IMG/VR virus record: IMGVR_UViG_3300023174_000040
Location: 62,001-126,000 of that record
Reading direction: 5' to 3' (one strand)
Length of the DNA: 64,000 nt
Positions within the stretch are counted from its first letter, which is position 1; each line of letters opens with the position of its first letter. This document shows, piece by piece, positions 3,736 to 61,430 of this stretch. Position numbers and translations under genes: made by a program. Under the pieces are notes generated by a model that was not told the DNA's origin, ran no database searches, and was given only the letters and a program-made list of their open reading frames with translations.

Positions 3736-3736
3736 A

Positions 3737-6700: not shown

Positions 6701-8389
6701 ACAAGTACGGACTTTGCTCTATTGCCATCAATTCATATTCAAGATCCAAATAGCACGGTTTGGTTTTCAGCTCCTCAGTTAGAAGCGGGCTCTAATGCTA
6801 CATCGTTCCGAAAGCCACCAGGCCAAGGAATTACTAGTAACCCAAGTCTCTCAAGTAATGTTTCTGCTACGCTAAAATCTACTATTCGAAACCATACTAT
6901 TAGTAAAATATACAGAGAAAGAGCAGCAAACGTAGTTCAACCGCTAACCATATATACAGAATATGATTATGTTCTAAATGAAACTAATGTTAGGGCAAGA
7001 TTGATCTGGTCTGGCAATGGTCAGACAACCATTCAGTGGAAACTCATAAGTGCTAATGGCACAGATTTAACAACAATACAATCAATAAATTTGAGTAAGC
7101 CAGGAATACACACATTCAATGTACCCATTTCTGGGTTGTCGGCTGGGGTCATTACAATTCAGGCTACGGCCTATTCTTCTGGTTCAGTAGTCGGCATGGC
7201 TTCAAATAACTTCAGAAAACTTAACAACGTGGCACGAGATGTTCGAGTGAATCGTTTCACTAGAAGTTTAAGAGTAAATAATGAACCATTTATTCCACTG
7301 TTTCTTCCAATCAACCCTACCGATGTTACAGATTGGCATTTGAATAGGTTTAAGACAGCAGGTTTTAATTGTTTAGTGGGAACACCAGGAACTCTACTTC
7401 AATCTGAAATTATAAACAACTCTGTACCACTCTCAAAAATTAATAACATAAATCAGCAGTTAGATAAATTGCATGCAGCAGGCATGGGTTTATTTTGGCC
7501 AATCCAATGGTCTCTCAATGACTGGTGGAATAATAAAAATTTTTATGATGGAAATATTTCGGGTTTAGCCAATACATATCAATGGATAGTCTCTACGTTT
7601 AAAAATCATCCCGCTATCTTGGGATGGTATATCATGGACGAACCTAGTGTATCTGATTGGGAAACCAACAGTGGTTTCTCTGAGTCAAATGTGAAAGATC
7701 TATGGCTTGCTGTTAAGACCTCCGATCCCGGCCGTCCGGCATACGTTAATTGGAATCATTCTTGGCAAATATCTCCTTATGGAGGATTTGAATGTACTGA
7801 CATATTGAGCCATGATGACTATTCTTTATCGGGAGAGACTTTTGATTATGGGGAATTATTATCTAATGTCAGGATGGTAAATAATTCTCAAGTAGGTCGA
7901 AAACCAACGTTCGAATTTATTTCGGGGTCGTATGACGAAGTTTTAATGAGACCATCTGCTGCGGCCCTGCGTGTTCATGCTTGGTTACATCTTGTTCACG
8001 GAACAAGAGGTTTTGGTTATTGGTCCAAGATTCCTATGGATCCTCAGGTATGGGCCGAAATGAGGACTTTCAATGAAAACTCTGCGGACTTACACAATCT
8101 TATTCTAGGAAATCCTGATGCTGTTTTGAGAACATCTAGTATTCCAAGTTCAACTATTCAGTATGCCATGTGGACGGTGGATGATTTTGCGTATTTGATC
8201 GCCGTGAATACTGCTTACTGTGATCAAACATTGAATATTGATGTCGCAAGCTTCTGCGAAAGGACGGTATCATCTGCAATTAAGCTTTATAGTTCAGGTA
8301 GTATTAATTCGGTTGATGGCATATTGAATGATAATATTGGACCATTAAATTATTGTGTTTATCGTTTCGTACTGGAACCAGGGACTTGA
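3737..8389 (+). CDS. S8 subtilase with carbohydrate-binding-like domains and a C-terminal glycoside-hydrolase-like domain
   Basis: Subtilisin motifs VDIIIFDEG, HASHCAGIAAG, AAGN, SGTSMACP; repeated N.SFE / WFDD.R.E galactose-binding-like segments; HPAILGWYIMDEP; ATG 3737 preferred to 3704. Confidence 0.85.
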   Translation: MKRYNIALKNKSDQDNFCNEMVSVGATNNYVPDRSCELLSKFKHTSNATFILTDDEVKKLEKDPRVLAINQPFADKNYLILTCEQQIEDEIKKSEPLGIFKSDRFFKYENPTKNHLDAIKELKKRIYNQPNQSINTIQSLTLEDKELTIQNLPGGADVDIIIFDEGHLDPDNPEYSIKINGIDKSRVFQIDWFSLLDTGVFPSRTEDFQYPYGPTYADPPYRNHASHCAGIAAGKLFGWAKKANIYTLSYGWVDNTGNWIGPEAILEFHNNKPINPRHGNKNPTIVNMSFGFAAYKPINKITKVVYRGVTYNAPNGGFTGEQLANYGLISFNSYIIHGVRGDATIDSQIQAMLDAGIILVGAAGNYFHKIDVVGGADYNNHYYYLADGQERTEYYHRGSGPTSNNGVICVGSLSNYFNGSEEYKSVFSETGPGVDVYAPGENIVSCIAGKFSDNSDKGYDGAWSSSYVEHPDNPNYRIRRMSGTSMACPQVVGALACYAESNRELTPEQAMNFIKDNAISAITSVGSNYNDFRNLQGGTNKILHYPNISIATSLSILTNASFETTTDGTTSQYIPGWTTYGVAKSSISVEIIDGGPALKISSTSKAFCFELPIDPAQDYILSFRAKASNARPKVEFNPTSPSQFWIPEPTQSNFDWRNFTFTWSASARGNVKEVWIALLLEWVGNGATVWFKDVKLEPVGGGINSIPNSTFSETVIETTVPNGWSIYSGVATVSLDQTQSTNKSRSLKVSGVGQPVRIAQSFNLDSVKTQGIKRVKISAWGKSNGLGSDRVKLEVYGANTSSPTILNLSGDTDWTKGEIILNVDLQSSYLLLWVNAPRPFLGDAWFDDIRIEAVEDSEVVNLLSNPSFLPSVANPNIPDYWGVWGDATLGIDPWTLDFFSIVDEISPVASAGVIKIRYPSTGNFVPKPGSNQLSMYLLTGSPLSLVPGTYTFSIYAKADRSNTIINIQHPSKFFATAQVGTEWQRITATSTDFALLPSIHIQDPNSTVWFSAPQLEAGSNATSFRKPPGQGITSNPSLSSNVSATLKSTIRNHTISKIYRERAANVVQPLTIYTEYDYVLNETNVRARLIWSGNGQTTIQWKLISANGTDLTTIQSINLSKPGIHTFNVPISGLSAGVITIQATAYSSGSVVGMASNNFRKLNNVARDVRVNRFTRSLRVNNEPFIPLFLPINPTDVTDWHLNRFKTAGFNCLVGTPGTLLQSEIINNSVPLSKINNINQQLDKLHAAGMGLFWPIQWSLNDWWNNKNFYDGNISGLANTYQWIVSTFKNHPAILGWYIMDEPSVSDWETNSGFSESNVKDLWLAVKTSDPGRPAYVNWNHSWQISPYGGFECTDILSHDDYSLSGETFDYGELLSNVRMVNNSQVGRKPTFEFISGSYDEVLMRPSAAALRVHAWLHLVHGTRGFGYWSKIPMDPQVWAEMRTFNENSADLHNLILGNPDAVLRTSSIPSSTIQYAMWTVDDFAYLIAVNTAYCDQTLNIDVASFCERTVSSAIKLYSSGSINSVDGILNDNIGPLNYCVYRFVLEPGT

Positions 8390-14210: not shown

Positions 14211-16397
14211 ATGAAGATCAACACGAACGGTTCTAATCTCAAGACTAATAACTTTAATGCCGAATCCATTGAATTTGGAATTGGCGATGTTAGCACTATC
14301 ATTGATATCCTCCGAAATAGGCTTTATGCAAATCCTATTAGGACCTTGACCCAGGAATATCTTTGCAATGCACGGGATAGCCACCGTGATTCAGGCAATA
14401 GTGATACTCCGGTTTCTGTTACGCTTCCCACCAAGTTGGATAGCGTTCTTAAGATCAGGGATTATGGTACTGGTCTTAGTCCGGAACGTGTCAAGGATGT
14501 TTTCGTCAATTATGGAAGCAGCACAAAACGTGCCGATAATGTCCAAACTGGTGGTTTCGGTATCGGAGCCAAAAGTGCGTGGGCATACACCGATAGTTTT
14601 ACCATTCTTAGTTACTACAATGGTAAGCTTCGTTCATATATTGCCCATACCGGCAAGAATAGCAATGGTACTCTTGAACTCATTAGTGAGGATGACACCA
14701 ATGAACCCAATGGTGTCGAAGTTCAGATTCCAATTCGTGAGTCCGATATTGAACAGTTTGTCTATGCTGTTTATCGATGCACTTTCTTTTGGGATGTAAA
14801 GCCGGAATTGAAGGGAATCACCAAACTGGAGATTCCTGCTTCTTGGCTAGATTCTAGCAAGAATATTTCATTCAAGAACGGCAATTGGTTTATCCTTCAT
14901 AAGGATGATTTCATCAAGCGTCTTTTTGATTCTTATCACGCTGACATCTTTGTCCTTATTGATAAGATCCCATATAGCATCAATAAATTTGCATCTCATG
15001 AACTTTCTGCCAATGTAAATGCTCTCAGGAATTCTTCATATGCAACTCATATGAGTTTTGTTGAAGTTGATAACGGAATTCTTGAAATCAGTGCTACTCG
15101 TGAAAGTGTTAGCGACAAGGATGATAGCAAGAAGAAGGTAAATGATATTTGCGGTGAGGCCATCAAGAGTCTTGTATCTTGTGTTGATGATGAACTTGGC
15201 AAGGATTTTGCCACTATTGAAGAATATATCAAGTTCTACTTTAGTGTGAAGTGTATCTTTAACTTTGCATCACTTCCAACAAAGATTGAGTTTACCTTCA
15301 AGAAGGGTGGTTTTGATTATAAGTATAATAGCGGTCGTCTTGTTTCTACGAGTTTTGATGGTTGCCGTATCAATAAGTATCACCTCAAGCAACAGAAAAC
15401 TCGAAGCGTATTGAAGATTGAGGAAAACCATCCTATTGAGATTGATCAAGCCTTGAAGTCTTGTTTTATTCTTGATGATGGTCGAAACCCAAGATATACT
15501 ATCAAAGAAAAGATCAAGAAGTATTTTGCGGATAACCAGAGTGTTACTGCGGTATATTGCATCGAAGGTTATAACACCGATCAGCAAAAGCGTTTCACAG
15601 AACATCTTGGTGCTAAATATATGCTTGATCTTCCCCACAACAGGGTGAGTTACAAGCAAAAGAGAGAGGCTGGCAAGATTAGTTATCGGGAGATTATGCT
15701 TAGTAGTGCCTACAGCAGCAAGAAATTGGCTTCTGGCACTAAGAAGGATGTTACTCTCGATGAAATCGAAAGTTCATCTAATGAATTCGTTGTCGTTCCT
15801 TTCTCGGGCGACGAAATGTATCACGATGAAACTTTTGAAGATAATGTCAAGTTTATCATCAATCACGGCAAATATACCGTGATCAAGTGTTCTAAGAAGG
15901 ATTACGCCTTGATCGTTGGTTCTGCAGACAATGTTCATACTTACGAAGATGTAATTGAGAGTTTTCCTGATTATATCGAAGTGGATGATAAGGTTATTGA
16001 GAACTTTGTTTATCGTCAAGCAAGCAACACTCTTGATTTTATGAGGAAGTTCATTGATAGGGTCGAATGTCCCAAACTCAGGGAATACTTTGAAATCAAG
16101 GGTGGAATCAAGGAAACGGGTAGGGGCGGAATTCCGCCTGCTGCTCGTGCGGATATCCCCGACCGTATCATCAGCCTCTACCCACAGTATGCCACAATTA
16201 ATGGCAATCTTGATAAGATGAATAAATTGGAGAATGAAATCAACTCAAAGTATCCGCTTCTGAGGTGCATCTCGACCGGCATGAATTATGGTTATGGATA
16301 TTATGGTCACGGTCATGATCGTGATGAGGTTGGCCGTAAGAATAAGGAAATGAATGATCTTGTATTCTATATCAATAATAAGTCCAAGGTGAACTAA
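14211..16397 (+). CDS. rIIA: rIIA-like protein with an N-terminal GHKL (HSP90-like) ATPase domain
   Basis: LYANPIRTLTQEYLCNARDSH, IRDYGTGL, GGFGIGAKS, NGVEVQIP. Confidence 0.8.
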   Translation: MKINTNGSNLKTNNFNAESIEFGIGDVSTIIDILRNRLYANPIRTLTQEYLCNARDSHRDSGNSDTPVSVTLPTKLDSVLKIRDYGTGLSPERVKDVFVNYGSSTKRADNVQTGGFGIGAKSAWAYTDSFTILSYYNGKLRSYIAHTGKNSNGTLELISEDDTNEPNGVEVQIPIRESDIEQFVYAVYRCTFFWDVKPELKGITKLEIPASWLDSSKNISFKNGNWFILHKDDFIKRLFDSYHADIFVLIDKIPYSINKFASHELSANVNALRNSSYATHMSFVEVDNGILEISATRESVSDKDDSKKKVNDICGEAIKSLVSCVDDELGKDFATIEEYIKFYFSVKCIFNFASLPTKIEFTFKKGGFDYKYNSGRLVSTSFDGCRINKYHLKQQKTRSVLKIEENHPIEIDQALKSCFILDDGRNPRYTIKEKIKKYFADNQSVTAVYCIEGYNTDQQKRFTEHLGAKYMLDLPHNRVSYKQKREAGKISYREIMLSSAYSSKKLASGTKKDVTLDEIESSSNEFVVVPFSGDEMYHDETFEDNVKFIINHGKYTVIKCSKKDYALIVGSADNVHTYEDVIESFPDYIEVDDKVIENFVYRQASNTLDFMRKFIDRVECPKLREYFEIKGGIKETGRGGIPPAARADIPDRIISLYPQYATINGNLDKMNKLENEINSKYPLLRCISTGMNYGYGYYGHGHDRDEVGRKNKEMNDLVFYINNKSKVN

Positions 16398-16408
16398 GGA
16401 GATAAGCC

Positions 16409-16750
16409 GTGATCAAAGAAATATGGACAATCATTTGTGGTGGAAGAAGCTTTGATAAGAACGATGAATTTTTTCAAACTAAACATACTTTTAGACTTGA
16501 AAAATATAAAGATAAAATCGAATGTGATATATTTAAGAACTACTACAAGGTCAAAGAAAATTTAATGTCCTTGATGAAGGAATTGAATGTCTTGGAGGAT
16601 AGGATCAACGACAAATATCCGCTGATGCTGTGTGCGGGCATAAGCCCGAAAGGTTCCTTCCGGTACGGTATGACACCAGAGCAGGTGGACGAGGAAAACG
16701 AAAAGATTCTGAAAGAATTGATCTTTTATATTAACTCTAAGAAATCATGA
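16409..16750 (+). CDS. hypothetical protein resembling the rIIA C-terminus
   Basis: LNVLEDRINDKYPLM...KELIFYINSK vs rIIA MNKLENEINSKYPLL...NDLVFYINNK. Confidence 0.65.
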   Translation: MIKEIWTIICGGRSFDKNDEFFQTKHTFRLEKYKDKIECDIFKNYYKVKENLMSLMKELNVLEDRINDKYPLMLCAGISPKGSFRYGMTPEQVDEENEKILKELIFYINSKKS

Positions 16751-18072
16751 AATACTATCTTCTTTCTAATTCAATTGTTATAAATACTTCGGGTCAAACT
16801 TATACCATTAGCAATAATGACTATAGGTATGATAAGATTAAGACATACCTGAATGAAGGTAAGTTTGAATTGGTTGCGGATGCTATTAATCCTACCAAGA
16901 ATCTCAATAAAGATGGTTTCACGGTTATTGATGGACTTGTCCATTATGGCAAGGATCCTATCCCGAGCATATTGGGTAATCAGTTTCTTCTCTTCAAAGA
17001 AACAAGTTGGGTATTCAAAAGTCTTTTCAACTTCTGGTATAATCTGAAGAATAGGGTCGATGATCATGCTGCCTCTGAAATGATCCAGGCTCTTATTGAG
17101 AACAGTGCCTATCCTGTTACCGAGGATGGGTTCTATCTGATTTATTCAAACAACAATTCAGATCAGACAAATAGTGTTTTGAATAAAAAGAATCAATCTG
17201 ATTCTCATATTCATTTTTATAATATTGCTAATTGTCCCGAGAAATATTTCACAGCATTTAGCAATCGTAAAAATCTTGATGAGGTTCTTGAGAGTGTTTT
17301 CGGATTTAGTGCTAAGAAACTCAAGAAACTTGCACTGCAGAATATTTTCAAGCCTGATAATAATTTCTTGGACTATAGGTTTTTCTTTTTTGGAGAAGCC
17401 TTCAAGGATGCTCTTCATGCAGACAATCTTTATGAAGTTATTGAAAAGAATATCTTTAACGTTGACTTCGGAGATATTGCCGGCTATGGCGGTTTGAATA
17501 GTTTTATTAAAGATTACACAAGAGAAAAAGATGGATCTTACAATCAAAAGAAAATCCTTAATTTTCTCAAGAGTTCAACCCGTCAGGCCGCATTCATTGA
17601 AATCGGGGATCAATACCCAAGGTTGAAGGAAACCATTAACCTGGACGTTCAACAGGTTGGTCTTGTAAACAACGCAGATGAAATCCTTAACTATCTTAAC
17701 AAGGAAACTGCCAAGTTGCAGGATCCCGAATTCGATCTTAAAATCAAGGAAAATTTTCCTGACTTTTGGAGTCTCAATGAACATGAAGTTGACGATATGA
17801 GATTGTTGATGCCCAATACAAATTACGATCTCAAAGAGTGGACTAATATTATGCAGAACTGCATCCACGGTTATGCCGATAATGTTTTGAAGGCTAAGAC
17901 AGTTGTATTTGCAATCATGGACAAGAATACTAATGAAATGATTTATAATGTTGAAGTTGCAAGAAAGAACATTGTTCAGTTCAAGGCTCGTGGAAATAAT
18001 GAACCCAAAAAGGCAGATATGAAAAAGATTTGCAGCCTGTTGGCAGATCGTGGTTTGCTTTTCAAAGAGTGA
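16747..18072 (+). CDS. rIIB-like N-terminus fused to a PcfJ-like C-terminal domain
   Basis: Follows rIIA; LFNFWYNL...YPVTEDGFYLIY is rIIB-like; LKEWTNIMQNCIHGY...IVQFKARGNNEP is PcfJ-like. Confidence 0.6.
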   Translation: MKYYLLSNSIVINTSGQTYTISNNDYRYDKIKTYLNEGKFELVADAINPTKNLNKDGFTVIDGLVHYGKDPIPSILGNQFLLFKETSWVFKSLFNFWYNLKNRVDDHAASEMIQALIENSAYPVTEDGFYLIYSNNNSDQTNSVLNKKNQSDSHIHFYNIANCPEKYFTAFSNRKNLDEVLESVFGFSAKKLKKLALQNIFKPDNNFLDYRFFFFGEAFKDALHADNLYEVIEKNIFNVDFGDIAGYGGLNSFIKDYTREKDGSYNQKKILNFLKSSTRQAAFIEIGDQYPRLKETINLDVQQVGLVNNADEILNYLNKETAKLQDPEFDLKIKENFPDFWSLNEHEVDDMRLLMPNTNYDLKEWTNIMQNCIHGYADNVLKAKTVVFAIMDKNTNEMIYNVEVARKNIVQFKARGNNEPKKADMKKICSLLADRGLLFKE

Positions 18073-22349: not shown

Positions 22350-23072
22350 ATGCTTGAGTTTTACAAGAACAGCGATATTCGGGAAGAACTCAAGAATATT
22401 CTCAGCGATAGGCAACTGATCAGTTCGCTCTTTAGAAGCGTTCCTGAACTTGAGTCAATTGGTTTCTCTGTAACCAATGAGTATGACGATAGCAACTATT
22501 ATGATAGTGTAAGACTTGAAAGCGTCAATGGTTATTCTTGGAATCCTTATGAAGATGATTATGATGATGATTATGATTCAAGCAATAGCCCTACCGGCAA
22601 GAAGTTAGACGAGGAAATTGCACGGGCTTGTGCGAGTTTAATTGAAGAAGTAGGCAAAGATTTTGGATACGGAGATGAAAACTCTCTTCTAAGATCGGAT
22701 TACACCTCGCCCAGTTCTACAACTAAGCCCTACAGAGAATTTAATAGGTTTATTCTCGATCTTGCTGCTGGAAATAAGCTAAAGGACGAATCTATTCTGG
22801 CTAAGATCGCATCAAAATTTGATCCAAAGTGGGCCTTGTATTACGCCTTTGATCATGGAAGAATGAACAAAGAAATTGAGGACAAGATCTTCCTTAAAAA
22901 GGGAAACATGAGGGAAGCCTACCTTTATAGTGTTCATGTTTTAAAGGATGTTCTTCCAAAGAACATTGAGGATTTTCATATTCTTAATTCTTTTGGAAAG
23001 AAAAAGGAATCCTCTGATCAGGAATATCTTAATAAGTATCTTGAATTCAAGAAAACATTAGTTGTTGAATAA
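22350..23072 (+). CDS. hypothetical protein
   Basis: 240-aa ORF directly after the ligase-like gene. Confidence 0.75.
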   Translation: MLEFYKNSDIREELKNILSDRQLISSLFRSVPELESIGFSVTNEYDDSNYYDSVRLESVNGYSWNPYEDDYDDDYDSSNSPTGKKLDEEIARACASLIEEVGKDFGYGDENSLLRSDYTSPSSTTKPYREFNRFILDLAAGNKLKDESILAKIASKFDPKWALYYAFDHGRMNKEIEDKIFLKKGNMREAYLYSVHVLKDVLPKNIEDFHILNSFGKKKESSDQEYLNKYLEFKKTLVVE

Positions 23073-23425
23073 TTTTCAACCTTATCAAAAAATCTAACTT
23101 CGGCCAAATTTGATCCTACTACTTTTTTGTTTTCATATTCTTTTCCAATAACGATAATATTAACCCCTTGATCAGACAGTAGTTTCTCCATTTCCTCTTC
23201 ACTATCAAATACAAATACGCTATCTACGTGTTTGATGCTGAGGAGAAACTCTTTTCTATTTTCTTCTTTATTGAAAGGTCTATCTTTGCCTTTTAATAAA
23301 GAAACTCTTTGATCGCTATCTATTCCAACGATTAATCTGTCTCCAAGACTCTTTGCATATTCCATAAGTCTAATATGGCCTATATGTAAAATATCATAGC
23401 ATCCGTTAGTCCAAATTGTTTTCAT
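23018..23425 (-). CDS. cytidylyltransferase-family nucleotidyltransferase (RfaE domain II / HldC-like)
   Basis: MKTIWTNGCYDILHIGH, LIVGIDSD, KGKDRPFN, YSTT. Confidence 0.85.
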   Translation of the reverse strand: MKTIWTNGCYDILHIGHIRLMEYAKSLGDRLIVGIDSDQRVSLLKGKDRPFNKEENRKEFLLSIKHVDSVFVFDSEEEMEKLLSDQGVNIIVIGKEYENKKVVGSNLAEVRFFDKVENYSTTNVFLNSRYLLRYS

Positions 23426-24162
23426 GGAGTTGATACTCCAAATTGACTGACTACCTTCAAAGAGCATTGGTTTGCGAATCTTATGCTCTTTTCTATATTC
23501 TTGGTTTTCATATAGCCCACAACAAATGCAGCAAGAAAAGTATCTCCTGCGCCGCAAACATCCCTAATCTCAACTTTCCTTGTTGGATATTTTTTTATTT
23601 TTTGTTTGTGGAAGTGTATTGCCCCATTCTCCCCGTCTGTAACTACTAGGTGGCAACAATCAGGGAATTTTAAGCCTTGAATGTTATTCAGGTATTCTTT
23701 TTGATTTACCTTCAAGAAGTCAATAAAGGATAAATCTTTTGGTTTTCTTTTTGTATCCATGAACCTAACAGCACTGTTTTTGCATATAAGTTCTAAATCA
23801 GGTTCTTGTAAAAACCCTTTGTTATAATCTGATATTACTATTGCATCATATTTTTGATGTTTGTATTTTTTAGTGTTTATTCTTTCGCAACTATCGTGAA
23901 CATCTTCTCTAAAGACTATTGAATTATATCTTGTATCAATAAATCTTCTTTTTATTATCTTTTGTTTATTTGTTATTAAATCCACATCTGCAGAAGGCAA
24001 TAAAGAAAGAATATTTCTAACGACATTTGCCGCCATGCCATCTGTCGAGTTCTTCTTTCCATTATTTTTAAAACACAATGCAGGGGCTTCTGGACATACT
24101 CTTTCGCATGTCCCGTAGATGTATTCGTCAGAGCAGGATTCGCCAACTACTAATATTCTCAT
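23422..24162 (-). CDS. PfkB-family sugar kinase (RfaE domain I / HldA-like)
   Basis: ILVVGE...D.YIYG...RVCPEAP, AIVISDYNKG, LKVN, DVCGAGDTF. Confidence 0.85.
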   Translation of the reverse strand: MRILVVGESCSDEYIYGTCERVCPEAPALCFKNNGKKNSTDGMAANVVRNILSLLPSADVDLITNKQKIIKRRFIDTRYNSIVFREDVHDSCERINTKKYKHQKYDAIVISDYNKGFLQEPDLELICKNSAVRFMDTKRKPKDLSFIDFLKVNQKEYLNNIQGLKFPDCCHLVVTDGENGAIHFHKQKIKKYPTRKVEIRDVCGAGDTFLAAFVVGYMKTKNIEKSIRFANQCSLKVVSQFGVSTP

Positions 24163-37991: not shown

Positions 37992-38233
37992 ACCATGCCA
38001 AAGTGTATTATCGGACCAAATGGAGTAGCACATGGCTTAATGTGCAAAGATGGCAAATTATGTGGACAAAAAGGAAATATTCTACAAAGTTATTTAAAAG
38101 ATTCTAAGACAAAATCAGATCTACTCCTTATAGGTCCAATGTCATATGTTTCAAAAAAACCTTTATGGCCAATTTTGTGAATTCGCTATTTTACAAAAAA
38201 AGAAGATATTCAAAAATTAGTGGAGTAAAAAAC

Positions 38234-39193
38234 ATGATAACAATATTTGATGACAATAGAAATTTTTATCCTTATGAATTAATGAACTTCCCAGAAGGTG
38301 AAAGTTTTGTTAAACTAAATATTAATTCAAAAAACCCTGTAAATATACTTTGGAAGTATGAGAATGACCAAGAATTATTTGTTTTGGGTTTAATTATTGA
38401 TGTTATTTGTCACGATGGGGGTGTACTTAAAAATCTTTATATTCCTTATTTTCCTCACGCAAGACAAGATAGAAACACATCAAAAAATCAACCTTTTTCA
38501 CTAAGAGTATTTGTTGGATGTTTGAAGGAAATTCTTTTTGGCTACCTTACGAATGGGCCGTATCTGGAAAAAATAAAAATTCATAGTTTAGATATTCACT
38601 CTGGCGTTTTGAGTTCTCTAATTAACAATAATCCTTACTTAGTATGGCTATCAAACCCAGAGTTATTTAAATCATTAGATTCTTGTGAATTAATTCAGCA
38701 TTTTAATTTTAGCCATATAAATTGTATAATTTGCCCAGATAAAGGAGCGAAAGATAGATCAACACAATGGGCAGATAAATTAAACTTGCCAATTTTATAT
38801 TGCGAAAAAACAAGAGATCCAAGTACTGGTAGATTAAGTGATCCTGTTATTGTTAATATGGAAAATTTAAGGTCTGAATGGGCATACCTTCTAGTTGATG
38901 ATATTGGCACAGGATTTGGAACTCATATTCAATTGGCTAATTTTATTAAATCTAAAATTAATGTTCCAATAGAAATTTTTGTTTCTCATGCTGGATTTTC
39001 TAATGGAATCGAACCAGTATTAAATGTTTTTGATAGAATTTATACAACAAACAGTCTGGTCAAGGGACACAACAAAATATTAGACTTGCAAAGACAAAAC
39101 AACCCGCTACAATGGGGGAGTATATTTGTTGTTGATGTTGAAAAAATCTTTGAAAAACAAATGCAAGAGCGGCGAGGAGCAGACCATGAATAA
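38234..39193 (+). CDS. prs: ribose-phosphate pyrophosphokinase-like protein (candidate Adps)
   Basis: NFPEGES, IPYFPHARQDR, LDIHS, CPDKGA, KTRD, LLVDDIGTGFGT, VSHAGF. Confidence 0.9.
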   Translation: MITIFDDNRNFYPYELMNFPEGESFVKLNINSKNPVNILWKYENDQELFVLGLIIDVICHDGGVLKNLYIPYFPHARQDRNTSKNQPFSLRVFVGCLKEILFGYLTNGPYLEKIKIHSLDIHSGVLSSLINNNPYLVWLSNPELFKSLDSCELIQHFNFSHINCIICPDKGAKDRSTQWADKLNLPILYCEKTRDPSTGRLSDPVIVNMENLRSEWAYLLVDDIGTGFGTHIQLANFIKSKINVPIEIFVSHAGFSNGIEPVLNVFDRIYTTNSLVKGHNKILDLQRQNNPLQWGSIFVVDVEKIFEKQMQERRGADHE

Positions 39194-39644
39194 AACCGAC
39201 AACGAGCCGTCTCCTGGTTCTCACGGGTGGTATCGCATTGTCGTCGATAGTCAAACAGGCAAAGTCATCAGGCGAGAAGACTGCGGCGATTCTCCGCTAA
39301 AGGTTGAACGTGAAGCAAACGACGATGACGACAAATCGCACACGCTGATAGCGTCCGCTGTGGTTTCTCTTGTCGCCTCTCTTGTTACTTCGGCGTGTTT
39401 TATTTCTTGCCAACGGCAGGACGTTGACGGCCGACTTCATCCGGCTCTCTTGAAACTGACGGACCAACAGAACGACCTAAACATCCATGACATCCAGTTG
39501 GAGCGGCTGTGGAGCAATATTGTTCTCACCACAATCTCGGCCGCTTTGTCCCGTAGACCTCAAGCCAAGACGAAATCAAGCGTCTGCGACTTACCCACTT
39601 GGAGCGGCAGGTGCCTGATATTAGCCAAACTTATAAATTATTAA
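39186..39644 (+). CDS. hypothetical protein on a GC-rich patch
   Basis: MNKTDNEPSPGSHG start; about 53% GC in a sampled 60-nt line. Confidence 0.5.
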   Translation: MNKTDNEPSPGSHGWYRIVVDSQTGKVIRREDCGDSPLKVEREANDDDDKSHTLIASAVVSLVASLVTSACFISCQRQDVDGRLHPALLKLTDQQNDLNIHDIQLERLWSNIVLTTISAALSRRPQAKTKSSVCDLPTWSGRCLILAKLINY

Positions 39645-39877
39645 ATATTGCTCTTGAGAAAAGCTTAATAATTAGAGATTGTCGGCAGGTTTTCTGCGAT
39701 GAAAAATTGTATAATGAAATTTATGATATAATACAACACACTACTACCATTGACACACTAGATCAAATGGCAGATGAAGTGCATTGTTTGGCAAATAACG
39801 GTTATATTGATGATGATGCGGAGCGTTTTTTGATAATGAAAATTAGTGATCAAAAAATTTCACTTTCTAATACTTAA
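39599..39877 (+). CDS. hypothetical protein
   Basis: ORF track. Confidence 0.55.
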   Translation: MERQVPDISQTYKLLNIALEKSLIIRDCRQVFCDEKLYNEIYDIIQHTTTIDTLDQMADEVHCLANNGYIDDDAERFLIMKISDQKISLSNT

Positions 39878-39895
39878 AACAAAAAGGAGTTATAA

Positions 39896-41521
39896 ATGAA
39901 CACTTTGCCAATTTTACTCAGCGACAGTTACAAACAATTTCATTGGATGATGTATCCAAAAGGAATTACTAAATTGTATAGTAATATGACCCCAAGAAAT
40001 TTTAAGCACCTTAAAACAGATCGTGCATTATTTTTTGGGCTGCAATATTATATTAAGGAATACCTTATCACACAATGGAACGAAAACTTTTTCAAAAAAC
40101 CAAAAGAAGAAGTTGTTAAAGAATTTAAAAGATTTCATAAACATTTTAGTAACTATGATATGCCAACAGAGCATATTGAAAAATTGCATGATTTAGGCTA
40201 TATGCCAATTCTTATCAAAGCATTACCAGAAGGTAGTCTTGTTGAAGAAAAAGTGCCATTTTTTACTATCACAAACACCCACCCAGACTTTGCTTGGTTG
40301 GTTAACTTTCTTGAAACTCAAATGAGTACAAGTATTTGGGATTTTTGTGTTGTAGCAACCATTGCTTATGAATATCGTAAAATATTAAATAAATGGGCAA
40401 ATAAAACTTGCGATAATAGAAATTTTGTTCAATGGCAAGGTCATGATTTCGCACAACGAGGAAGAAGTAGCCAAGAAAGCACACTAAACCAAGCAGGACA
40501 TTTGCTTAGTTTTACCGGCACTGATACCATTCCCAGTGTTTTAATGCTGGAAAAATATTATAATGCCAATATGGAAAAAGAGTTAATCGCAAGTAGTGTC
40601 CCGGCTACAGAACACAGCATTATGACTAGTTATGGAAAAGAAAATGAAATTGATGCTTTTGAAAGAATCTTGGATCAATTTCCAACTGGTATTGTGAGCA
40701 TAGTTAGCGACAGTTTTGATCTGTGGCAAGTATGCACTAGTTTTTGTACTCAACTTAAGGATAAAATCTTAAGCAGAGATGGAAAAATGGTCATCAGACC
40801 TGACAGTGGAGATCCTGCTGATATCGTGTGCGGATTAAATATACTTAAATTTGATAATTTTAAAAAAGCCGAAGAATGTTTTCATTTTCATATAGATAAT
40901 GGTAAAAATCTGTTTATAGTTGATGACAAGTGCTACAAGGTTAAAATTCATTCTGGTAGTGAGTTTATCTACGAGCCATATAATCTAAACCCTTCGGAAA
41001 AGGGAGTTGTAGAACTTCTTTGGGACGTTTTCGGTGGTACAATTAACAGTAAGGGATATAAGGAACTAGATTCTCATATCGGAGTAATCTACGGCGATAG
41101 CATTAGCCGAGAAAGAGCAGAAGATATTTGCTCTAGGCTAGAAAAGAAAGGTTTCGCTAGTAATAATATCGTTTTTGGCATAGGAAGTTACACATATAAT
41201 TATAACACTAGAGATAGTCTTGGTATTGCTGTTAAAAGCACCTATTGCGAAGTAGATGGTATTCCTAGGGAGATTTTCAAAGACCCTGTAACGGATGACG
41301 GCGTTAAAAAGAGTGCAAGAGGATTACTGAAAATAGACTCAAATGAAAATAGAGACTATATTCTTAAAGATTGTGTTTCTAAAGAAGAAGAAACTCAAGG
41401 TTATTTGAAGCCAGTGTTTTCTGACGGCAAACTTTTAGTAGATGATGAATTGAGTGTCATTAGAACAAGAATAAACCATGCAGAACTCTGGCTCTGTCCA
41501 GCGATTAAAGATGAACAATGA
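39896..41521 (+). CDS. nadV: nicotinamide phosphoribosyltransferase-family protein (candidate Namat)
   Basis: LLSDSYKQFH, FFGLQY, HDFAQRG, FTGTDT, VPATEHS, SIVSDSFD, VIRPDSGDP, IYGDSI, FGIGS, KDPVTDDGVKKSARG. Confidence 0.95.
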   Translation: MNTLPILLSDSYKQFHWMMYPKGITKLYSNMTPRNFKHLKTDRALFFGLQYYIKEYLITQWNENFFKKPKEEVVKEFKRFHKHFSNYDMPTEHIEKLHDLGYMPILIKALPEGSLVEEKVPFFTITNTHPDFAWLVNFLETQMSTSIWDFCVVATIAYEYRKILNKWANKTCDNRNFVQWQGHDFAQRGRSSQESTLNQAGHLLSFTGTDTIPSVLMLEKYYNANMEKELIASSVPATEHSIMTSYGKENEIDAFERILDQFPTGIVSIVSDSFDLWQVCTSFCTQLKDKILSRDGKMVIRPDSGDPADIVCGLNILKFDNFKKAEECFHFHIDNGKNLFIVDDKCYKVKIHSGSEFIYEPYNLNPSEKGVVELLWDVFGGTINSKGYKELDSHIGVIYGDSISRERAEDICSRLEKKGFASNNIVFGIGSYTYNYNTRDSLGIAVKSTYCEVDGIPREIFKDPVTDDGVKKSARGLLKIDSNENRDYILKDCVSKEEETQGYLKPVFSDGKLLVDDELSVIRTRINHAELWLCPAIKDEQ

Positions 41522-51381: not shown

Positions 51382-51466
51382 GCTGAAGTGGCGAAACTGG
51401 CGAAACGCAGGGGACTTAAAATCCCCCACATTAGAAACACTGCGGGTTCGAATCCCGCCTTCAGCA
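51382..51466 (+). tRNA. tRNA-Leu(UAA)
   Basis: GCTGAAG/CTTCAGC acceptor, GGGGA-CTTAAAA-TCCCC anticodon arm, long variable arm, TTCGAAT loop. Confidence 0.95.
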
Positions 51467-51482
51467 CTGTAAATAAAAACAA

Positions 51483-51842
51483 GGGGGCGTAAAGGTATCG
51501 ACTGGATAAAAAGATTTATAACTGCATGTCGAGGTTAGTCGAACGGCCTCGTTAAAATTCGACTAAAGCCTTAACTGGCACTGTTAATTACGCAATGGCT
51601 GCCTGATAAAAAGGGCAACCACGAATCTAGGAAGCTAATGTTGGATGCGTCCTAAAATTCGTCGTCAAATCCAACTGGTTTTCTGGTGGTCAACTTACCT
51701 GAAAACGAGAAAATAGGTTGAGAGATTTTAAAGACTTTTGTTTATTGTAATCTTTAAAATCTATTTGAACAATAAACCAAACATGTGAAGAAGTTATATT
51801 TTGATTTATTTCAGGACAGGAGTTCGACTCTCCTCGCCTCCA
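51483..51842 (+). ncRNA. ssrA: tmRNA; tag (A)GTVNYAMAA*
   Basis: 5' GGGGGCG pairs with 3' CGCCTCC-A, G-U at position 3, T-arm caggag-ttcgact-ctcct; tag ORF ggc act gtt aat tac gca atg gct gcc tga. Confidence 0.92.
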
Positions 51843-56778: not shown

Positions 56779-57042
56779 CCGAAGGTAGCAAAACGGTTAA
56801 TGCAACAAACTCATGAATTTTCGTGCCATACGATTGGAAACTTCGTATGGGATGTCGTCAAATTCGGTGAAACCTAAATGCGTGAGCATATGGCAATGCC
56901 GAGCGAAGCCCGTAAGGGAACGTGTAGAGACTTAACGGCGACCACCTAAATCGTAAGATATGGTGAAGACAAAGTCCAAGGAGTGGTGAAAATCACACAA
57001 ACTTGAATTTGTAGACTGTGGGTTCGAATCCCACCCTTCGGA
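56779..57042 (+). tRNA. tRNA(CAU), probably Ile2, interrupted by a group I intron
   Basis: Exons 56779-56814 and 57006-57042 give CCGAAGG/CCTTCGG-A and ACAAA-CTCATAA-TTTGT; lies 16 nt after tilS. Confidence 0.88.
56815..57005 (+). ncRNA. group I self-splicing intron (191 nt, no ORF)
   Basis: aaattcggtgaa, caatgccgagc, gtagagact, aaagtcc; terminal G; P1 CATGAA/TTCGTG with a U-G wobble at the 5' splice site. Confidence 0.9.
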
Positions 57043-57046
57043 CGTA

Positions 57047-60144: not shown

Positions 60145-60240
60145 ATGGAACACCTAAAAGACTTAAAGATTCTTCCTACCGATTATTTTGAGTATGGAGG
60201 ACAAATTGAACGATGGAAAGGTGAACTACCCACCCCCTAA
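60145..60240 (+). pseudogene. short ORF apparently truncated by the TnpB element
   Basis: MEHLKDLKILPTDYFEYGGQIERWK runs into the element end at 60221 and stops within it. Confidence 0.45.
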
Positions 60241-61430
60241 AGGGAGTGGGCTTCAAGTTTCATAGCCTTGTCTAACGACAACGACTCCACTTGTTTTTGT
60301 TTATTGAGCGACTTGGTTCCCAAACCACTCATATTCAAACCTTGTTTTAGTATGTTGAGACTGGCGTTGTGGTCTCGGTCAATGTTCTTCCCACAAACGC
60401 ACTTCCATTCACGATCTTTCAGCGATAATTCTTGATTGATGTATCCACAATCAAAGCAAGTTTTACTGCTTGGGAAAAATCGGTCTATCTTAATCAGTGT
60501 TCGTCCATACCATTCTGCTTTGTAGGATAGTTGACGAACGAATTCTCCCCAACCGCAATTCATCACCGATTTTGCCAACTTATGATTACTCATCATGCCC
60601 TTTACATTAAGGTCTTCTACGCATATGATTTGGTTTTCGTCAATCAACTTTCTGGAAAGTTTATGCAAGAAGTCCGTTCTATTGTTGGTGATTTTTTCAT
60701 ATATCTTGGCTACTTTAAGTCTTTGTTTTCCTCTGGTGGTTCCTCCTTTTGTCTTTTTGCTCAATTGTCTTTGGTTGTATTTTAACTTTTTCTCTAACTT
60801 GTGGTAGTGTTTAGGGTTGTCAAAAACTTCGGCGTTGGAGCAAACAGCAAAGCTTTTGATGCCCAAATCAACACCTATTTTGTTTTTGTTTTTCTTGAGT
60901 TTATTTTGCTCAACTTCACAAGTAAGTGAAACAAAATACTTGTTTGTTGAAGTCTTGGATATGGTGATGAACCTTATCTCACCAAATTCACGATGGATGT
61001 TTAGTCTGATTCCTTCCTTGAATTTGGGAAAATATATTCTGTCATTCTTGACAGAGATGTGTTGTGGAACTCTGAAACTTTGCTTTTTGTGTTTTGACTT
61101 GAAGATTGGAAACTTGGTTTCTTTCCTGAAAAACTTGTTGTATGCTGTGTCCAAGTCACGCAATGTGTGTTGCAATGTTTGGCTGTTGACTTCCCTAAGC
61201 CAGTTGTATTCGGTCTTCTTTTTAACCTTGGTCAGTTCGTTGGCACAATCGTAGTAGTTCAATGTCTTCTTGTTGTCTAAATACTCTTCTTTTCGTCTGT
61301 TCAAGAAATAATTCCACACGAACCTTCTGCAACCAAAGTGTTGACTCAGTTTTTCTTTTTGGTCTTTTGTGGGTAGTAGTTGAAACTTAAACGATTTGAG
61401 CATACAATGGTATGTATGCAGGTCAGTCCA
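60221..61430 (-). mobile_element. TnpB-only IS200/IS605-family (IS1341-like) element
   Basis: Right end reads ...gaagcccactccctttagggggtgggtagttcac on the minus strand; left boundary is approximate; no tnpA. Confidence 0.75.
60237..61403 (-). CDS. tnpB: RNA-guided endonuclease TnpB
   Basis: N-terminal HTH_OrfB-like region, RuvC IGVDLG / VEDL / DRDHNA, zinc finger CFDCG...CVCG. Confidence 0.95.
   Translation of the reverse strand: MLKSFKFQLLPTKDQKEKLSQHFGCRRFVWNYFLNRRKEEYLDNKKTLNYYDCANELTKVKKKTEYNWLREVNSQTLQHTLRDLDTAYNKFFRKETKFPIFKSKHKKQSFRVPQHISVKNDRIYFPKFKEGIRLNIHREFGEIRFITISKTSTNKYFVSLTCEVEQNKLKKNKNKIGVDLGIKSFAVCSNAEVFDNPKHYHKLEKKLKYNQRQLSKKTKGGTTRGKQRLKVAKIYEKITNNRTDFLHKLSRKLIDENQIICVEDLNVKGMMSNHKLAKSVMNCGWGEFVRQLSYKAEWYGRTLIKIDRFFPSSKTCFDCGYINQELSLKDREWKCVCGKNIDRDHNASLNILKQGLNMSGLGTKSLNKQKQVESLSLDKAMKLEAHSL

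What the first reader, a model, noticed from the sequence alone, without database searches (positions are those of the whole stretch)
38234..41521. PRS-like plus NAMPT-like pair: candidate NARP1 NAD+ reconstitution (anti-defence) pathway
Seen: a PRPP-synthetase-like gene and a NAMPT-like gene lie about 700 nt apart, with no NMN adenylyltransferase in the window. Established: phage NARP1 uses a PRS homolog (Adps) and a NAMPT homolog (Namat) to rebuild NAD+ from ADP-ribose and nicotinamide after depletion by Thoeris, DSR or SIR2-type defences. Inference: this phage counters NAD-depleting immunity.
Basis: partly seen in the sequence, partly recalled or inferred. Interest (0 to 1): 0.62.

Follow-up and report, generated by a model that had tools for sequence, protein, structure and literature searches.

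The report
Phage NARP1 NAD+ rebuilding gene pair
A large freshwater phage carries the known two-enzyme NARP1 pathway (Adps plus Namat), which rebuilds NAD+ from the pieces left by NAD-destroying bacterial defences; it is an ordinary new member of that system, except that a piece of foreign DNA has split the first gene.

Summary
A PRPP-synthetase-like gene (38234-39193, +) and a NAMPT-like gene (39896-41521, +) lie 702 nt apart. The held 323-kb virus record (CheckV 64% complete) encodes no Nmnat.

- **Namat:** the NAMPT-like protein falls in the Namat clade (100/100 support), with SPbetaL1 and ICP1 Namat and apart from KVP40-type and bacterial Nampt. It carries the Namat-specific adenine-clamp motif (GSYTYNYNTRD) and all catalytic residues.
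- **Adps:** the PRS-like protein falls on the Adps side of a 100/100 split from cellular Prs. It scores below the Prs family cut-off, as characterised Adps do, and keeps the acceptor and catalytic residues. All six relatives' loci inspected have a NAMPT-family gene next to it.
- **Other pathways:** no Macro, RyR, NUDIX or PnuC gene was found, so this is plain NARP1, not NARP1-AP, NARP2 or NARP3.

The 702-nt gap is not empty. A 445-nt GC-rich foreign cassette (39167-39611) sits in the linker of what is one longer adps gene in near-identical relatives. The result is an Adps core, a 152-aa cassette ORF and a separate 88-aa ORF.

Enzyme activity and anti-defence function are inferred, not tested. 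Verdict: new member of a known kind.

The parts
38234..39193 (+). adps: Adps (ADP-ribose pyrophosphokinase-type, PRPS fold) catalytic core, 319 aa. The last 9 codons and the stop (from 39167) come from the inserted cassette.
   Evidence: phrog_619 E 2e-47 and TIGR01251 72 bits against a cut-off of 113; characterised Adps score 98-114 and E. coli Prs 423 on the same model. Lies on the Adps side of the 100/100 split from cellular Prs. R, H, D, K(EKTRD) and DD residues are conserved. GGAG precedes ATG 38234.
39167..39611 (.). 445-nt foreign GC-rich cassette inserted in the linker between the Adps core and its former C-terminal module. It has GAGCGGC direct repeats at both ends.
   Evidence: GC is 53% against 30-34% in the flanks. 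The near-isogenic contig L015 (98-99.8% identical flanks) has a single A in its place. An independent run, X2, holds a contig that skips exactly 39167-39611 with A between. The probable source run X1 spans the cassette in one contig, and runs X3 and X4 from other studies hold cassette sequence. The cassette is 83% identical to GC-rich RusA-bearing contigs L097 and L098. There is no Rfam match and no second copy in the record.
39186..39644 (+). Cassette ORF, 152 aa, with one hydrophobic (membrane-like) segment. It has its own GAGGAG ribosome-binding site, and its start overlaps the adps stop. Function unknown.
   Evidence: Sequence read. One homologue is known (P0193, 75% identity, in GC-rich contigs). 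Run X3 shows indels of +12 and -3 nt that net to a multiple of three. No Pfam, PHROG, PADLOC or Atlas match.
39611..39877 (+). 88-aa helical ORF with a GTG start and GGAG 6 nt upstream, supplied by the cassette end. In close relatives it is the C-terminal module of a longer Adps. Function unknown.
   Evidence: P0009 (97% identical, 393 aa) and P0010 (80%, 414 aa) read straight from the Adps core into this sequence. The model of P0009 shows a low-confidence linker at about residues 300-335 followed by helices. The only family hint is a sub-threshold Pfam hit, pP_pnuc_2, E 4e-4. The Atlas gave nothing.
39896..41521 (+). namat: nicotinamide ADP-ribose transferase (Namat), 541 aa.
   Evidence: The best solved relatives are 9W5X and 9W5W, SPbetaL1 Namat, at E 1e-151, against human NAMPT at about 1e-71 (PDB ids from PMC12774641). 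Identity is 47.7% to SPbetaL1, 45.8% to ICP1 and 34% to KVP40 Nampt. Falls in the 100/100 Namat clade.
40613..40615 (+). Codon of His240, the residue that aligns with SPbetaL1 His245 in the conserved ATEHS motif, where NAMPT-family enzymes carry their catalytic histidine. The relatives L011 and L012 carry a 323-aa intein-like insertion just upstream, after codon 237 (nt 40606).
   Evidence: Residue map. The L011 protein aligns with the window protein up to A237 (SVPA) and again from T238 (TEHS), with 323 extra residues between. The insert begins CYDKETEVLTDIG and ends GN, followed by T.
40832..40996 (+). Lineage-specific insertion in Namat (residues 313-367), about 45 residues longer than the 8-residue loop of SPbetaL1 Namat. 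It is predicted to be a small beta-rich subdomain.
   Evidence: Alignment gap against 9W5X. Conserved in L011. Model pLDDT is 55-75 here against 82 overall.
41183..41215 (+). Selectivity-clamp helix motif GSYTYNYNTRD (residues 430-440), the Namat signature that stacks on the adenine of ADPR-PP and NAD+.
   Evidence: The consensus GS-X-phi-X-phi-X-phi-TRD with aromatic X is from PMC12774641. It is present in all 7 NARP1-type rows and in none of the 21 Nampt-type rows. KVP40 has G, G, L and Q at the equivalent positions.

Best explanation
The locus is a NARP1 module. Adps (38234-39193) would take the ADP-ribose released by host NADase defences (Thoeris, DSR1, DSR2, SIR2-HerA and similar) and transfer the beta,gamma-pyrophosphate of ATP onto its distal ribose, giving ADPR-PP. 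Namat (39896-41521) would then displace that pyrophosphate with nicotinamide and give NAD+ directly, so no NMN adenylyltransferase is needed. The four co-oriented, tightly packed ORFs (adps core, cassette ORF, 88-aa ORF, namat) are most likely transcribed together. The cassette landed in a disordered linker after the complete catalytic fold, so the Adps core should still work. Shown here: homology, clade membership, motif and residue conservation, gene neighbourhood, absence of the alternative pathways' genes from the held record, and the reality of the insertion. Inferred: substrates, expression and the anti-defence effect.
For: **Namat**
- Its closest solved structure is SPbetaL1 Namat, E 1e-151, against 1e-71 for NAMPT.
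- It lies in a 100/100 clade with SPbetaL1 and ICP1 Namat, apart from KVP40-type, other phage and bacterial Nampt.
- The SCH motif GSYTYNYNTRD matches the published Namat consensus.
- The SCL third residue is Lys37 followed by His38, which fits the stated rule.
- All residues that contact nicotinamide and the NMN moiety are conserved except Ser190 (Ala186 here), and His240 of the ATEHS motif is present.

**Adps**
- It lies on the Adps side of a 100/100 split from cellular Prs.
- TIGR01251 gives 72 bits, like SPbetaL1 (106) and ICP1 (98), against 423 for E. coli Prs.
- The equivalents of ICP1 F18, R87, H121, D161, K185 and D212/D213 are conserved.
- The model of the 97%-identical P0009 has a confident PRPS fold (pLDDT 87; TM 0.70-0.76 to PRPS structures).

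**Neighbourhood**
- All six relatives' loci inspected pair the two genes. Osterman et al. report that 97% of Adps-clade genes have a Namat homologue within ten genes.

**Alternatives absent**
- No Nmnat, NUDIX, PnuC, Macro or RyR gene is found in the 323-kb record.

**Core intact**
- The insertion lies at residue 305/306 of the fused form, in the low-confidence linker.
- P0011 and the SPbetaL1 and ICP1 Adps lack the C-terminal module altogether.
Against: - No biochemistry or expression data exist; no RNA run holds the stretch.
- The Adps is very divergent: at most 33% identical to any named phage protein and further from the Prs and PHROG profiles than the characterised Adps.
- Its PP-loop (DDIGTGFGTH) differs from the ICP1 donor loop (DDICDGAASF) that the structural paper treats as family-typical. 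SPbetaL1 (DDLSSFGGTF) differs from ICP1 as well.
- ICP1 F92, an adenine contact, is Thr here.
- The Prs outgroup was Gammaproteobacteria only, and the deep order inside the Adps-type clade is unresolved.
- Namat enzymes also accept PRPP in vitro.
- adps has been cut from its usual C-terminal module by the cassette.
- The record is about 64% complete, so an Nmnat elsewhere in the genome cannot be excluded.
Confidence: 0.82

Rival explanations
1. Plain nicotinamide salvage or a NARP2-like route. The PRS-like enzyme makes PRPP from ribose-5-phosphate, the NAMPT-like enzyme makes NMN, and a host Nmnat or an unsequenced phage Nmnat finishes NAD+.
For: Both proteins belong to the Prs and Nampt superfamilies. 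Namat converts PRPP and nicotinamide to NMN at about half the rate of human Nampt (PMC12774641). The record is only about 64% complete. The PP-loop of this Adps subclade is unlike that of ICP1.
Against: Namat clade membership at 100/100 and the adenine-clamp motif, which is absent from all 21 Nampt-type sequences. The PRS-like protein scores 72 bits against a 113-bit Prs cut-off and sits with the characterised Adps. No Nmnat or NUDIX gene is present in 323 kb. Osterman et al. found that 94% of phages with a KVP40-type Nampt encode an Nmnat and found no phage with both pathways.
Confidence: 0.07
2. The module is damaged. The cassette insertion has crippled Adps by removing its C-terminal module and adding a foreign 9-residue tail, so this strain has lost NARP1 function or keeps only the Nampt-like side activity of Namat.
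For: The closest relatives (97% and 80% identical) encode a single fused 393-414 aa protein. The insertion-free allele is found in another sample (X2 and L015).
Against: The insertion point lies after the last core element, in a low-confidence linker. Characterised Adps (272 and 280 aa) and the 73% relative P0011 have no such module. All four ORFs are open, with ribosome-binding sites and overlapping stop and start codons. Cassette sequence with its phage junctions turns up in runs from two further studies.
Confidence: 0.07
3. The 445-nt insertion is a self-splicing intron or an assembly artefact, so the real product is the fused Adps.
For: It interrupts a reading frame that is continuous in relatives and is GC-rich like many structured RNAs.
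Against: No Rfam family matches at E up to 1. The 5' flank ends in A, not the U expected for a group I intron, and 445 nt is far too short for a group II intron; both points rest on general knowledge of intron structure. It holds a 152-codon ORF with its own ribosome-binding site. It is homologous to ordinary coding DNA in GC-rich RusA-bearing contigs, with a 47-nt inverted piece at its 3' end. The probable source run assembles it at the same depth as its flanks, and other studies hold it.
Confidence: 0.03

Closest known systems
NARP1 of Bacillus phage SPbetaL1, coliphage Bas63 and Vibrio phage ICP1 (Adps + Namat; Osterman et al., bioRxiv 10.1101/2024.02.11.579819; PMC12774641; PMC13586617)
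   Same: The same two enzyme families in the same order and orientation. Namat is 46-48% identical to the characterised enzymes and has an identical clamp-motif pattern and catalytic residues. Adps is on the same side of the Prs/Adps split, with the acceptor and catalytic residues conserved. No Nmnat is present.
   Different: Adps is far more divergent, with a PP-loop of DDIGTGFGTH. The genes are not adjacent: a foreign cassette ORF and an 88-aa ORF lie between them. In the closest relatives Adps carries an extra C-terminal helical module that is absent from the characterised enzymes. Namat has a roughly 45-residue extra subdomain. The host is unknown, and the source is a freshwater phage record of at least 323 kb.
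NARP2 of Vibrio phage KVP40 (Nampt NadV + bifunctional Nmnat NatV)
   Same: A NAMPT-superfamily enzyme that uses nicotinamide, and the same end product, NAD+.
   Different: The window protein is only 34% identical to KVP40 Nampt and lies across a 100/100 branch from it. KVP40 lacks the aromatic clamp residues. No Nmnat or NUDIX gene is found here, and a PRS-like gene is present.
NARP1-AP (Adps-Adpp-Namat of Vibrio phage Gary) and RyDEP-assisted NARP1 (mycobacteriophage DyoEdafos)
   Same: A NARP1 operon with extra genes lying within or beside the pair.
   Different: The extra genes here have no Macro or RyR domain. One is a recent foreign insertion, and the other is a detached piece of adps with an unknown fold family.
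Cellular PRPP synthetase (Prs) with nicotinamide phosphoribosyltransferase (NadV/Nampt) salvage
   Same: The same folds. The model of the Adps relative superposes on PRPS structures (TM 0.70-0.76, 14-20% identity).
   Different: The score is below the Prs family cut-offs. The proteins fall in phage-specific clades. The adenine-clamp motif is present. The two genes are linked, which Osterman et al. report to be very rare for cellular prs genes.

Membership tests
Namat (NARP1 step 2) | Falls in the Namat clade, distinct from the Nampt clade, in a Namat/Nampt tree | tested here: met
   IQ-TREE careful search, 28 rows. A 100/100 branch puts the window protein with SPbetaL1 Namat, ICP1 Namat and four Adps-adjacent homologues, against 21 Nampt-type rows (KVP40, other phages, bacteria).
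Namat (NARP1 step 2) | [quoted passage not shown] | tested here: met
   GSYTYNYNTRD at residues 430-440, with Y432 and Y436 aligned to F392 and Y396 of SPbetaL1.
Namat (NARP1 step 2) | Selectivity-clamp loop whose third residue is Arg, Lys or Tyr; with Lys or Tyr, the next residue does the stacking | tested here: met
   Lys37 aligns with Arg40 of SPbetaL1 and is followed by His38, and the loop has the same length. Whether His38 stacks on adenine was not tested.
Namat (NARP1 step 2) | Nampt-like catalytic core, including the histidine of the ATEHS motif | tested here: met
   D10, Y12, F185, R188, D210, A237, H240, R301, D303, G400, D401, G430 and S431 are conserved. SPbetaL1 S190 is A186 here.
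Namat (NARP1 step 2) | Prefers ADPR-PP over PRPP and makes NAD+ directly | not testable with these tools
   Needs an enzyme assay.
Adps (NARP1 step 1) | Falls in the phage Adps clade, separate from cellular Prs | tested here: met
   Careful tree of 39 rows: a 100/100 split of 7 cellular Prs from 32 phage-type rows that include SPbetaL1 Adps, ICP1 Adps and the window protein (quick 74-row tree). Caveats: the outgroup is Gammaproteobacteria only, and the deep order inside the clade is unresolved.
Adps (NARP1 step 1) | A Namat homologue within ten genes (97% of the clade, Osterman et al.) | tested here: met
   Namat starts 702 nt downstream, two ORFs away. The same pairing occurs in six relatives' loci.
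Adps (NARP1 step 1) | Conserved acceptor and catalytic residues (ICP1 F18, R87, H121, D161, K185, D212, D213) | tested here: met
   All are conserved in the multiple alignment. F92 is Thr here and Ser in SPbetaL1.
Adps (NARP1 step 1) | Remodelled PP-loop donor site as in ICP1 (C215-S220) (PMC13586617) | tested here: inconclusive
   The window has DDIGTGFGTH, ICP1 has DDICDGAASF, SPbetaL1 has DDLSSFGGTF and E. coli Prs has DDMIDTGGTL. The window form is the consensus of its 41-sequence alignment. No strict rule could be derived from the two characterised enzymes.
Adps (NARP1 step 1) | Converts ADPR + ATP to ADPR-PP + AMP | not testable with these tools
   Needs LC-MS of the purified enzyme.
NARP2 | KVP40-type Nampt plus an Nmnat in the same genome | tested here: not met
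   The NAMPT-like protein is not in the KVP40 clade. The only PF01467 gene in 323 kb is RfaE-II-like. No NUDIX gene is present. The record is 64% complete.
NARP3 | PnuC-like transporter plus NadR-like enzyme | tested here: not met
   No PF04973 match and no NadR-type PF01467 protein.
NARP1-AP / RyDEP-assisted NARP1 | Macro-domain ADPR-1P phosphatase (Adpp) or RyR-domain glycosidase in or near the operon | tested here: not met
   No PF01661 or PF02026 match in the record. The two intervening ORFs have no such domain.

The most novel reading that the evidence does not exclude
The material between adps and namat may be new NARP1 accessory equipment, comparable to Adpp or RyDEP. This covers the 88-aa helical module that the closest relatives fuse to Adps, and possibly the imported 152-aa membrane-type ORF. 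Such accessories could widen the range of defence products the pathway can recycle, or add a second counter-defence. Alternatively, the conserved DDIGTGFGTH donor loop of this freshwater Adps subclade may mark a changed donor or acceptor specificity.
Probability: 0.1. Interest if true: 0.6.

Novelty: new member of a known kind. Interest (0 to 1): 0.3.

Why it matters
It extends NARP1 to an AT-rich phage of at least 323 kb that recurs in lake and other freshwater metagenomes, and to an Adps subclade much more divergent than the enzymes studied so far. That subclade is useful for testing the sequence rules proposed for annotating Adps and Namat.

The Namat clamp motif worked as a clean classifier here. 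The proposed Adps PP-loop rule did not.

The locus also shows how such operons change in nature. A linker hot-spot appears in three states across relatives: nothing after the core, a fused module, or a foreign cassette that re-splits the gene. A relative also carries an intein-like insertion at the Namat catalytic motif.

For the biology of the phage, the module predicts that its hosts deploy NAD-depleting defences. This prediction is untested.

Tried and rejected
**Searches that found nothing**
- Megablast of the locus against 50,697 phage records: no match.
- The search for related loci with the Adps in IMG/VR: nothing.
- The cassette ORF and the 88-aa ORF have no match in Pfam above cut-off, PHROGs, PADLOC or the ESM Atlas.
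- The PDB copy holds no Adps structure; ICP1 Adps finds only Prs. No direct structural comparison with Adps was therefore possible.

**Outgroup problems**
- With E. coli Prs alone it returned only Gammaproteobacteria, so the Prs outgroup is narrow.

**Readings rejected or uninformative**
- Intron reading of the 445-nt insert: rejected (no Rfam match; boundaries and ORF content).
- Mobile-repeat reading of the insert: no second copy in the record.
- Nmnat reading of the PF01467 gene: rejected; it is RfaE-II-like.
- The promoter and terminator scans were not clearly above the shuffled expectation and are not used.
- PHROG membership does not discriminate Adps from Prs, because E. coli Prs also matches phrog_619.

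**Not run**
- The large representative-protein search, because the word search and family scans were sufficient.
- Complex prediction, because Adps and Namat are reported not to form a stable complex.

- Only genetic code 11 was used.
- Read laying was given 1,401 letters.


Full report
**1. What is there**

The window is bases 62001-126000 of a 323,267-bp IMG/VR virus record that CheckV rates 64% complete. It is AT-rich, at 29-39% GC. It carries phage hallmarks such as RIIA/RIIB-like genes and a DNA ligase-like gene, and ARAGORN reports one tRNA and a tmRNA candidate. Near-identical sequence occurs in lake and other freshwater metagenomes from nine studies.

At the reported place there are two co-oriented genes. 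The PRS-like ORF is listed as 38165-39193. Every homologue begins at the internal MITIFDD, and GGAG lies 8 nt upstream of ATG 38234. The NAMPT-like gene is 39896-41521, preceded by AAGGAG. The family scans agree with both names.

**2. Is the NAMPT-like protein a Namat or a Nampt?**

- **Solved structures.** The best matches by sequence are 9W5X and 9W5W at E 1e-151. These are the SPbetaL1 Namat crystal structures (PMC12774641). Human NAMPT follows at about 1e-71.
- **Identity.** It is 47.7% identical to SPbetaL1 Namat, 45.8% to ICP1 Namat and 34% to KVP40 Nampt, the NARP2 enzyme.
- **Tree.** I built a careful IQ-TREE tree of 28 sequences. They were the window protein; SPbetaL1 and ICP1 Namat; an Ounavirinae homologue; three metagenomic homologues that lie next to Adps-like genes; and 21 Nampt-type proteins found with KVP40 Nampt (Vibrio and Cronobacter phages, Arcicella, Flectobacillus, and one row labelled eukaryotic that is nearly identical to the Arcicella sequences). 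A 100/100 branch separates the seven NARP1-type rows, the window protein among them, from all 21 Nampt-type rows.
- **Signature motif.** The structural paper defines a Namat signature, the selectivity-clamp helix GS-X-phi-X-phi-X-phi-TRD, with aromatic residues that stack on adenine. The window protein has GSYTYNYNTRD. All seven NARP1-type rows have the motif and no Nampt-type row does.
- **Residue map.** Y432 and Y436 stand at the positions of F392 and Y396, where KVP40 has G and Q. Lys37-His38 fit the stated rule for the clamp loop. All nicotinamide and NMN contacts are conserved except Ser190 (Ala186 here), and His240 of the ATEHS motif is present.

Every sequence-level feature of Namat is met.

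**3. Is the PRS-like protein an Adps or a Prs?**

It is very divergent: at most 33% identical to any protein in 50,697 phage records.

| Protein | TIGR01251 score (cut-off 113 bits) |
|---|---|
| Window protein | 72 |
| ICP1 Adps | 98 |
| SPbetaL1 Adps | 106 |
| Ounavirinae homologue | 114 |
| E. coli Prs | 423 |

In the multiple alignment the equivalents of ICP1 F18, R87, H121, D161, K185 (in EKTRD) and D212/D213 are conserved. These are the acceptor and catalytic residues identified in PMC13586617.

The donor PP-loop is DDIGTGFGTH. ICP1 has DDICDGAASF, SPbetaL1 has DDLSSFGGTF and E. coli Prs has DDMIDTGGTL. The window form is the consensus of its alignment of 41 relatives. Because the two characterised enzymes differ from each other, I rate this feature inconclusive.

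A careful tree of 39 rows gives a 100/100 split. Seven cellular Prs fall on one side. On the other are 32 phage-type proteins that include SPbetaL1 Adps, ICP1 Adps and the window protein. A quick tree of 74 rows agrees. Two caveats apply. The only cellular Prs I could fetch were gammaproteobacterial. The deep order inside the phage clade is unresolved.

The model of the 97%-identical relative P0009 has a confident PRPS fold (pLDDT 87; Foldseek TM 0.70-0.76 to PRPS1 and bacterial Prs at 14-20% identity). The PDB copy holds no Adps structure.

**4. Neighbourhood and alternatives**

Each of the six relatives' loci that I fetched has a NAMPT-family gene immediately after the Adps-like gene. Their Adps-like proteins are 97%, 80%, 73% and about 43% identical to the window protein; the 80% protein lies on two contigs. 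Osterman et al. report this pairing for 97% of the Adps clade and very rarely for cellular prs.

The one PF01467 gene in the record (window 23018-23557, minus strand) matches RfaE domain II at E 6e-31. It lies beside an RfaE domain I-like kinase, and together they look like a split HldE for ADP-heptose synthesis. No NUDIX, PnuC, Macro or RyR gene is present. NARP2, NARP3, NARP1-AP and RyDEP assistance are therefore not supported for the held 323 kb.

**5. The gap between the genes**

The 702-nt gap is not a spacer. Relatives P0009 (393 aa) and P0010 (414 aa) read from the Adps core straight into an 88-residue helical module. That module is identical to the window ORF 39611-39877.

- **The insertion.** Against the near-isogenic contig L015 (98-99.8% identical flanks), the window has 445 extra bases, 39167-39611, in place of a single A. 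The insert is 53% GC against 30-34% for its flanks. It begins and ends with GAGCGGC.
- **Its ORF.** It carries its own GAGGAG ribosome-binding site and ATG (39186). The ORF is 152 codons long, has one hydrophobic segment, and its start overlaps the new adps stop. The right end of the insert supplies GGAG 6 nt before a GTG that restarts the 88-aa ORF.
- **Read evidence.** Contigs from public runs show the following. The probable source run X1 spans the insert in one 4,807-nt contig with no differences. X2, from another study, has a contig that skips exactly 39167-39611 with A between. X3 and X4, from two further studies, hold cassette sequence that runs 22 and 17 nt into the phage flanks. That is below the tool's 31-letter bridging rule, so it is partial independent support. 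X3 carries indels of +12 and -3 nt in the ORF, a net change that is a multiple of three.
- **Origin.** The only homologue of the ORF (P0193, 75% identity) lies in GC-rich contigs L097 and L098. They match window 39164-39512 at 83%, with the next 47 nt inverted. They also carry a RusA gene, so they are phage-like.

The insert is therefore a piece of foreign phage-like DNA that entered by illegitimate recombination. It is not an intron: there is no Rfam match, the flanking base is wrong for group I, and it holds coding content. It is not a repeat either, because the record has no second copy.

In the P0009 model the insertion point, residue 305/306, lies in the low-confidence linker after the last core element. 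SPbetaL1 Adps (272 aa), ICP1 Adps (280 aa) and the 73% relative P0011 have no C-terminal module. I therefore expect the Adps core to be active. This is an inference.

The 88-aa module has only a sub-threshold Pfam hit (pP_pnuc_2, E 4e-4) and no Atlas neighbour. Its function is unknown.

**6. Other features of Namat**

Residues 313-367 are an insertion relative to SPbetaL1 Namat. The insertion is conserved in L011 and modelled as a small beta-rich subdomain of modest confidence.

In L011 and L012 the Namat homologue is 865 aa. A 323-residue insert sits between SVPA and TEHS. It begins with Cys and ends in GN followed by Thr, as an intein would. Pfam gave no intein or endonuclease domain for it. 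The window allele lacks this insert.

**7. Mechanism and confidence**

The best explanation is NARP1. Adps pyrophosphorylates the ADP-ribose released by NADase defences, and Namat joins ADPR-PP to nicotinamide to give NAD+ without an Nmnat (pathway as described in 10.1101/2024.02.11.579819, PMC12774641 and PMC13586617). Homology, clade membership, motifs and gene context were tested here. Substrate use, expression and defence rescue were not. I put the confidence at 0.82.

The rivals are plain salvage or a NARP2-like route (0.07), a module crippled by the cassette (0.07), and an intron or assembly artefact (0.03).

**8. Novelty**

NARP1 was found in 4.3% of sequenced phages, so this is a new member of a known kind. 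The new elements are minor:
- a divergent freshwater Adps subclade with its own PP-loop;
- an optional C-terminal module;
- a cassette that re-splits the gene;
- an intein-like insertion in a relative.

Only genetic code 11 was used.

Noticed in passing
window 23018-24162, minus strand: Two adjacent genes look like a split HldE: an RfaE domain II-like adenylyltransferase (E 6e-31) and an RfaE domain I / PfkB-like kinase (E 6e-31). This suggests phage-encoded ADP-heptose synthesis. The first is the only cytidylyltransferase-fold gene in the 323-kb record.
   Followed up: partly
L011:6908-9505 and L012:7251-9848 (relatives; site equals window nt 40606): The Namat homologue of the 80% relative is 865 aa because of a 323-residue intein-like insertion between SVPA and TEHS, just upstream of the conserved histidine. 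The insert begins with Cys and ends in GN followed by Thr. Pfam gave no intein or endonuclease domain for it. The window allele lacks the insert.
   Followed up: partly
L097 and L098 (GC-rich metagenome contigs): These donor-like contigs hold the cassette ORF homologue (P0193) among small ORFs, two of which are preceded by a shared ACACGCAGGA-type sequence, plus a RusA gene. A GC-rich phage-like element therefore shares DNA with a phage of about 30% GC.
   Followed up: partly
L015:5283-5384 (near-isogenic relative): The Namat gene of L015 has about 100 extra bases, and window 40451-40505 matches it twice. The gene is called only from residue ~200 onward. This could be a real duplication or an assembly error.
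   Followed up: no
run X3, joints at window 39513/39565 and 39603/39929: One freshwater run holds a variant in which the 3' part of the cassette is inverted and the 88-aa ORF region is replaced by 168 other letters. This is a further state of the linker hot-spot, alongside the three described in the report.
   Followed up: no
window 51382-51842, plus strand: A tRNA-Leu (TAA) is followed 15 nt later by a predicted tmRNA with tag peptide GTVNYAMAA. An odd tRNA-like call lies at 56976-57043. All are ARAGORN calls only.
   Followed up: no
window 60237-61403, minus strand: A 388-aa ORF matches a PHROG transposase family strongly (phrog_506, E 1.5e-135). Separately, the relative L011 carries an OrfB_IS605 / Cas12f-like TnpB gene a few kb upstream of its adps.
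   Followed up: no
window 706-8389 and 14211-18072, plus strand: Two very large ORFs (1009 and 1561 aa) have protease-family PHROG hits. An RIIA-like gene is followed by an ORF with a weak RIIB-family hit.
   Followed up: no
L006 (Hafnia phage SarahDanielle, Ounavirinae) 3438-7137: This relative of the Bas63 group also has two small unrelated ORFs between its PRS-like gene and its NAMPT-like gene (592 aa). Non-adjacent NARP1 genes are therefore not unusual.
   Followed up: partly
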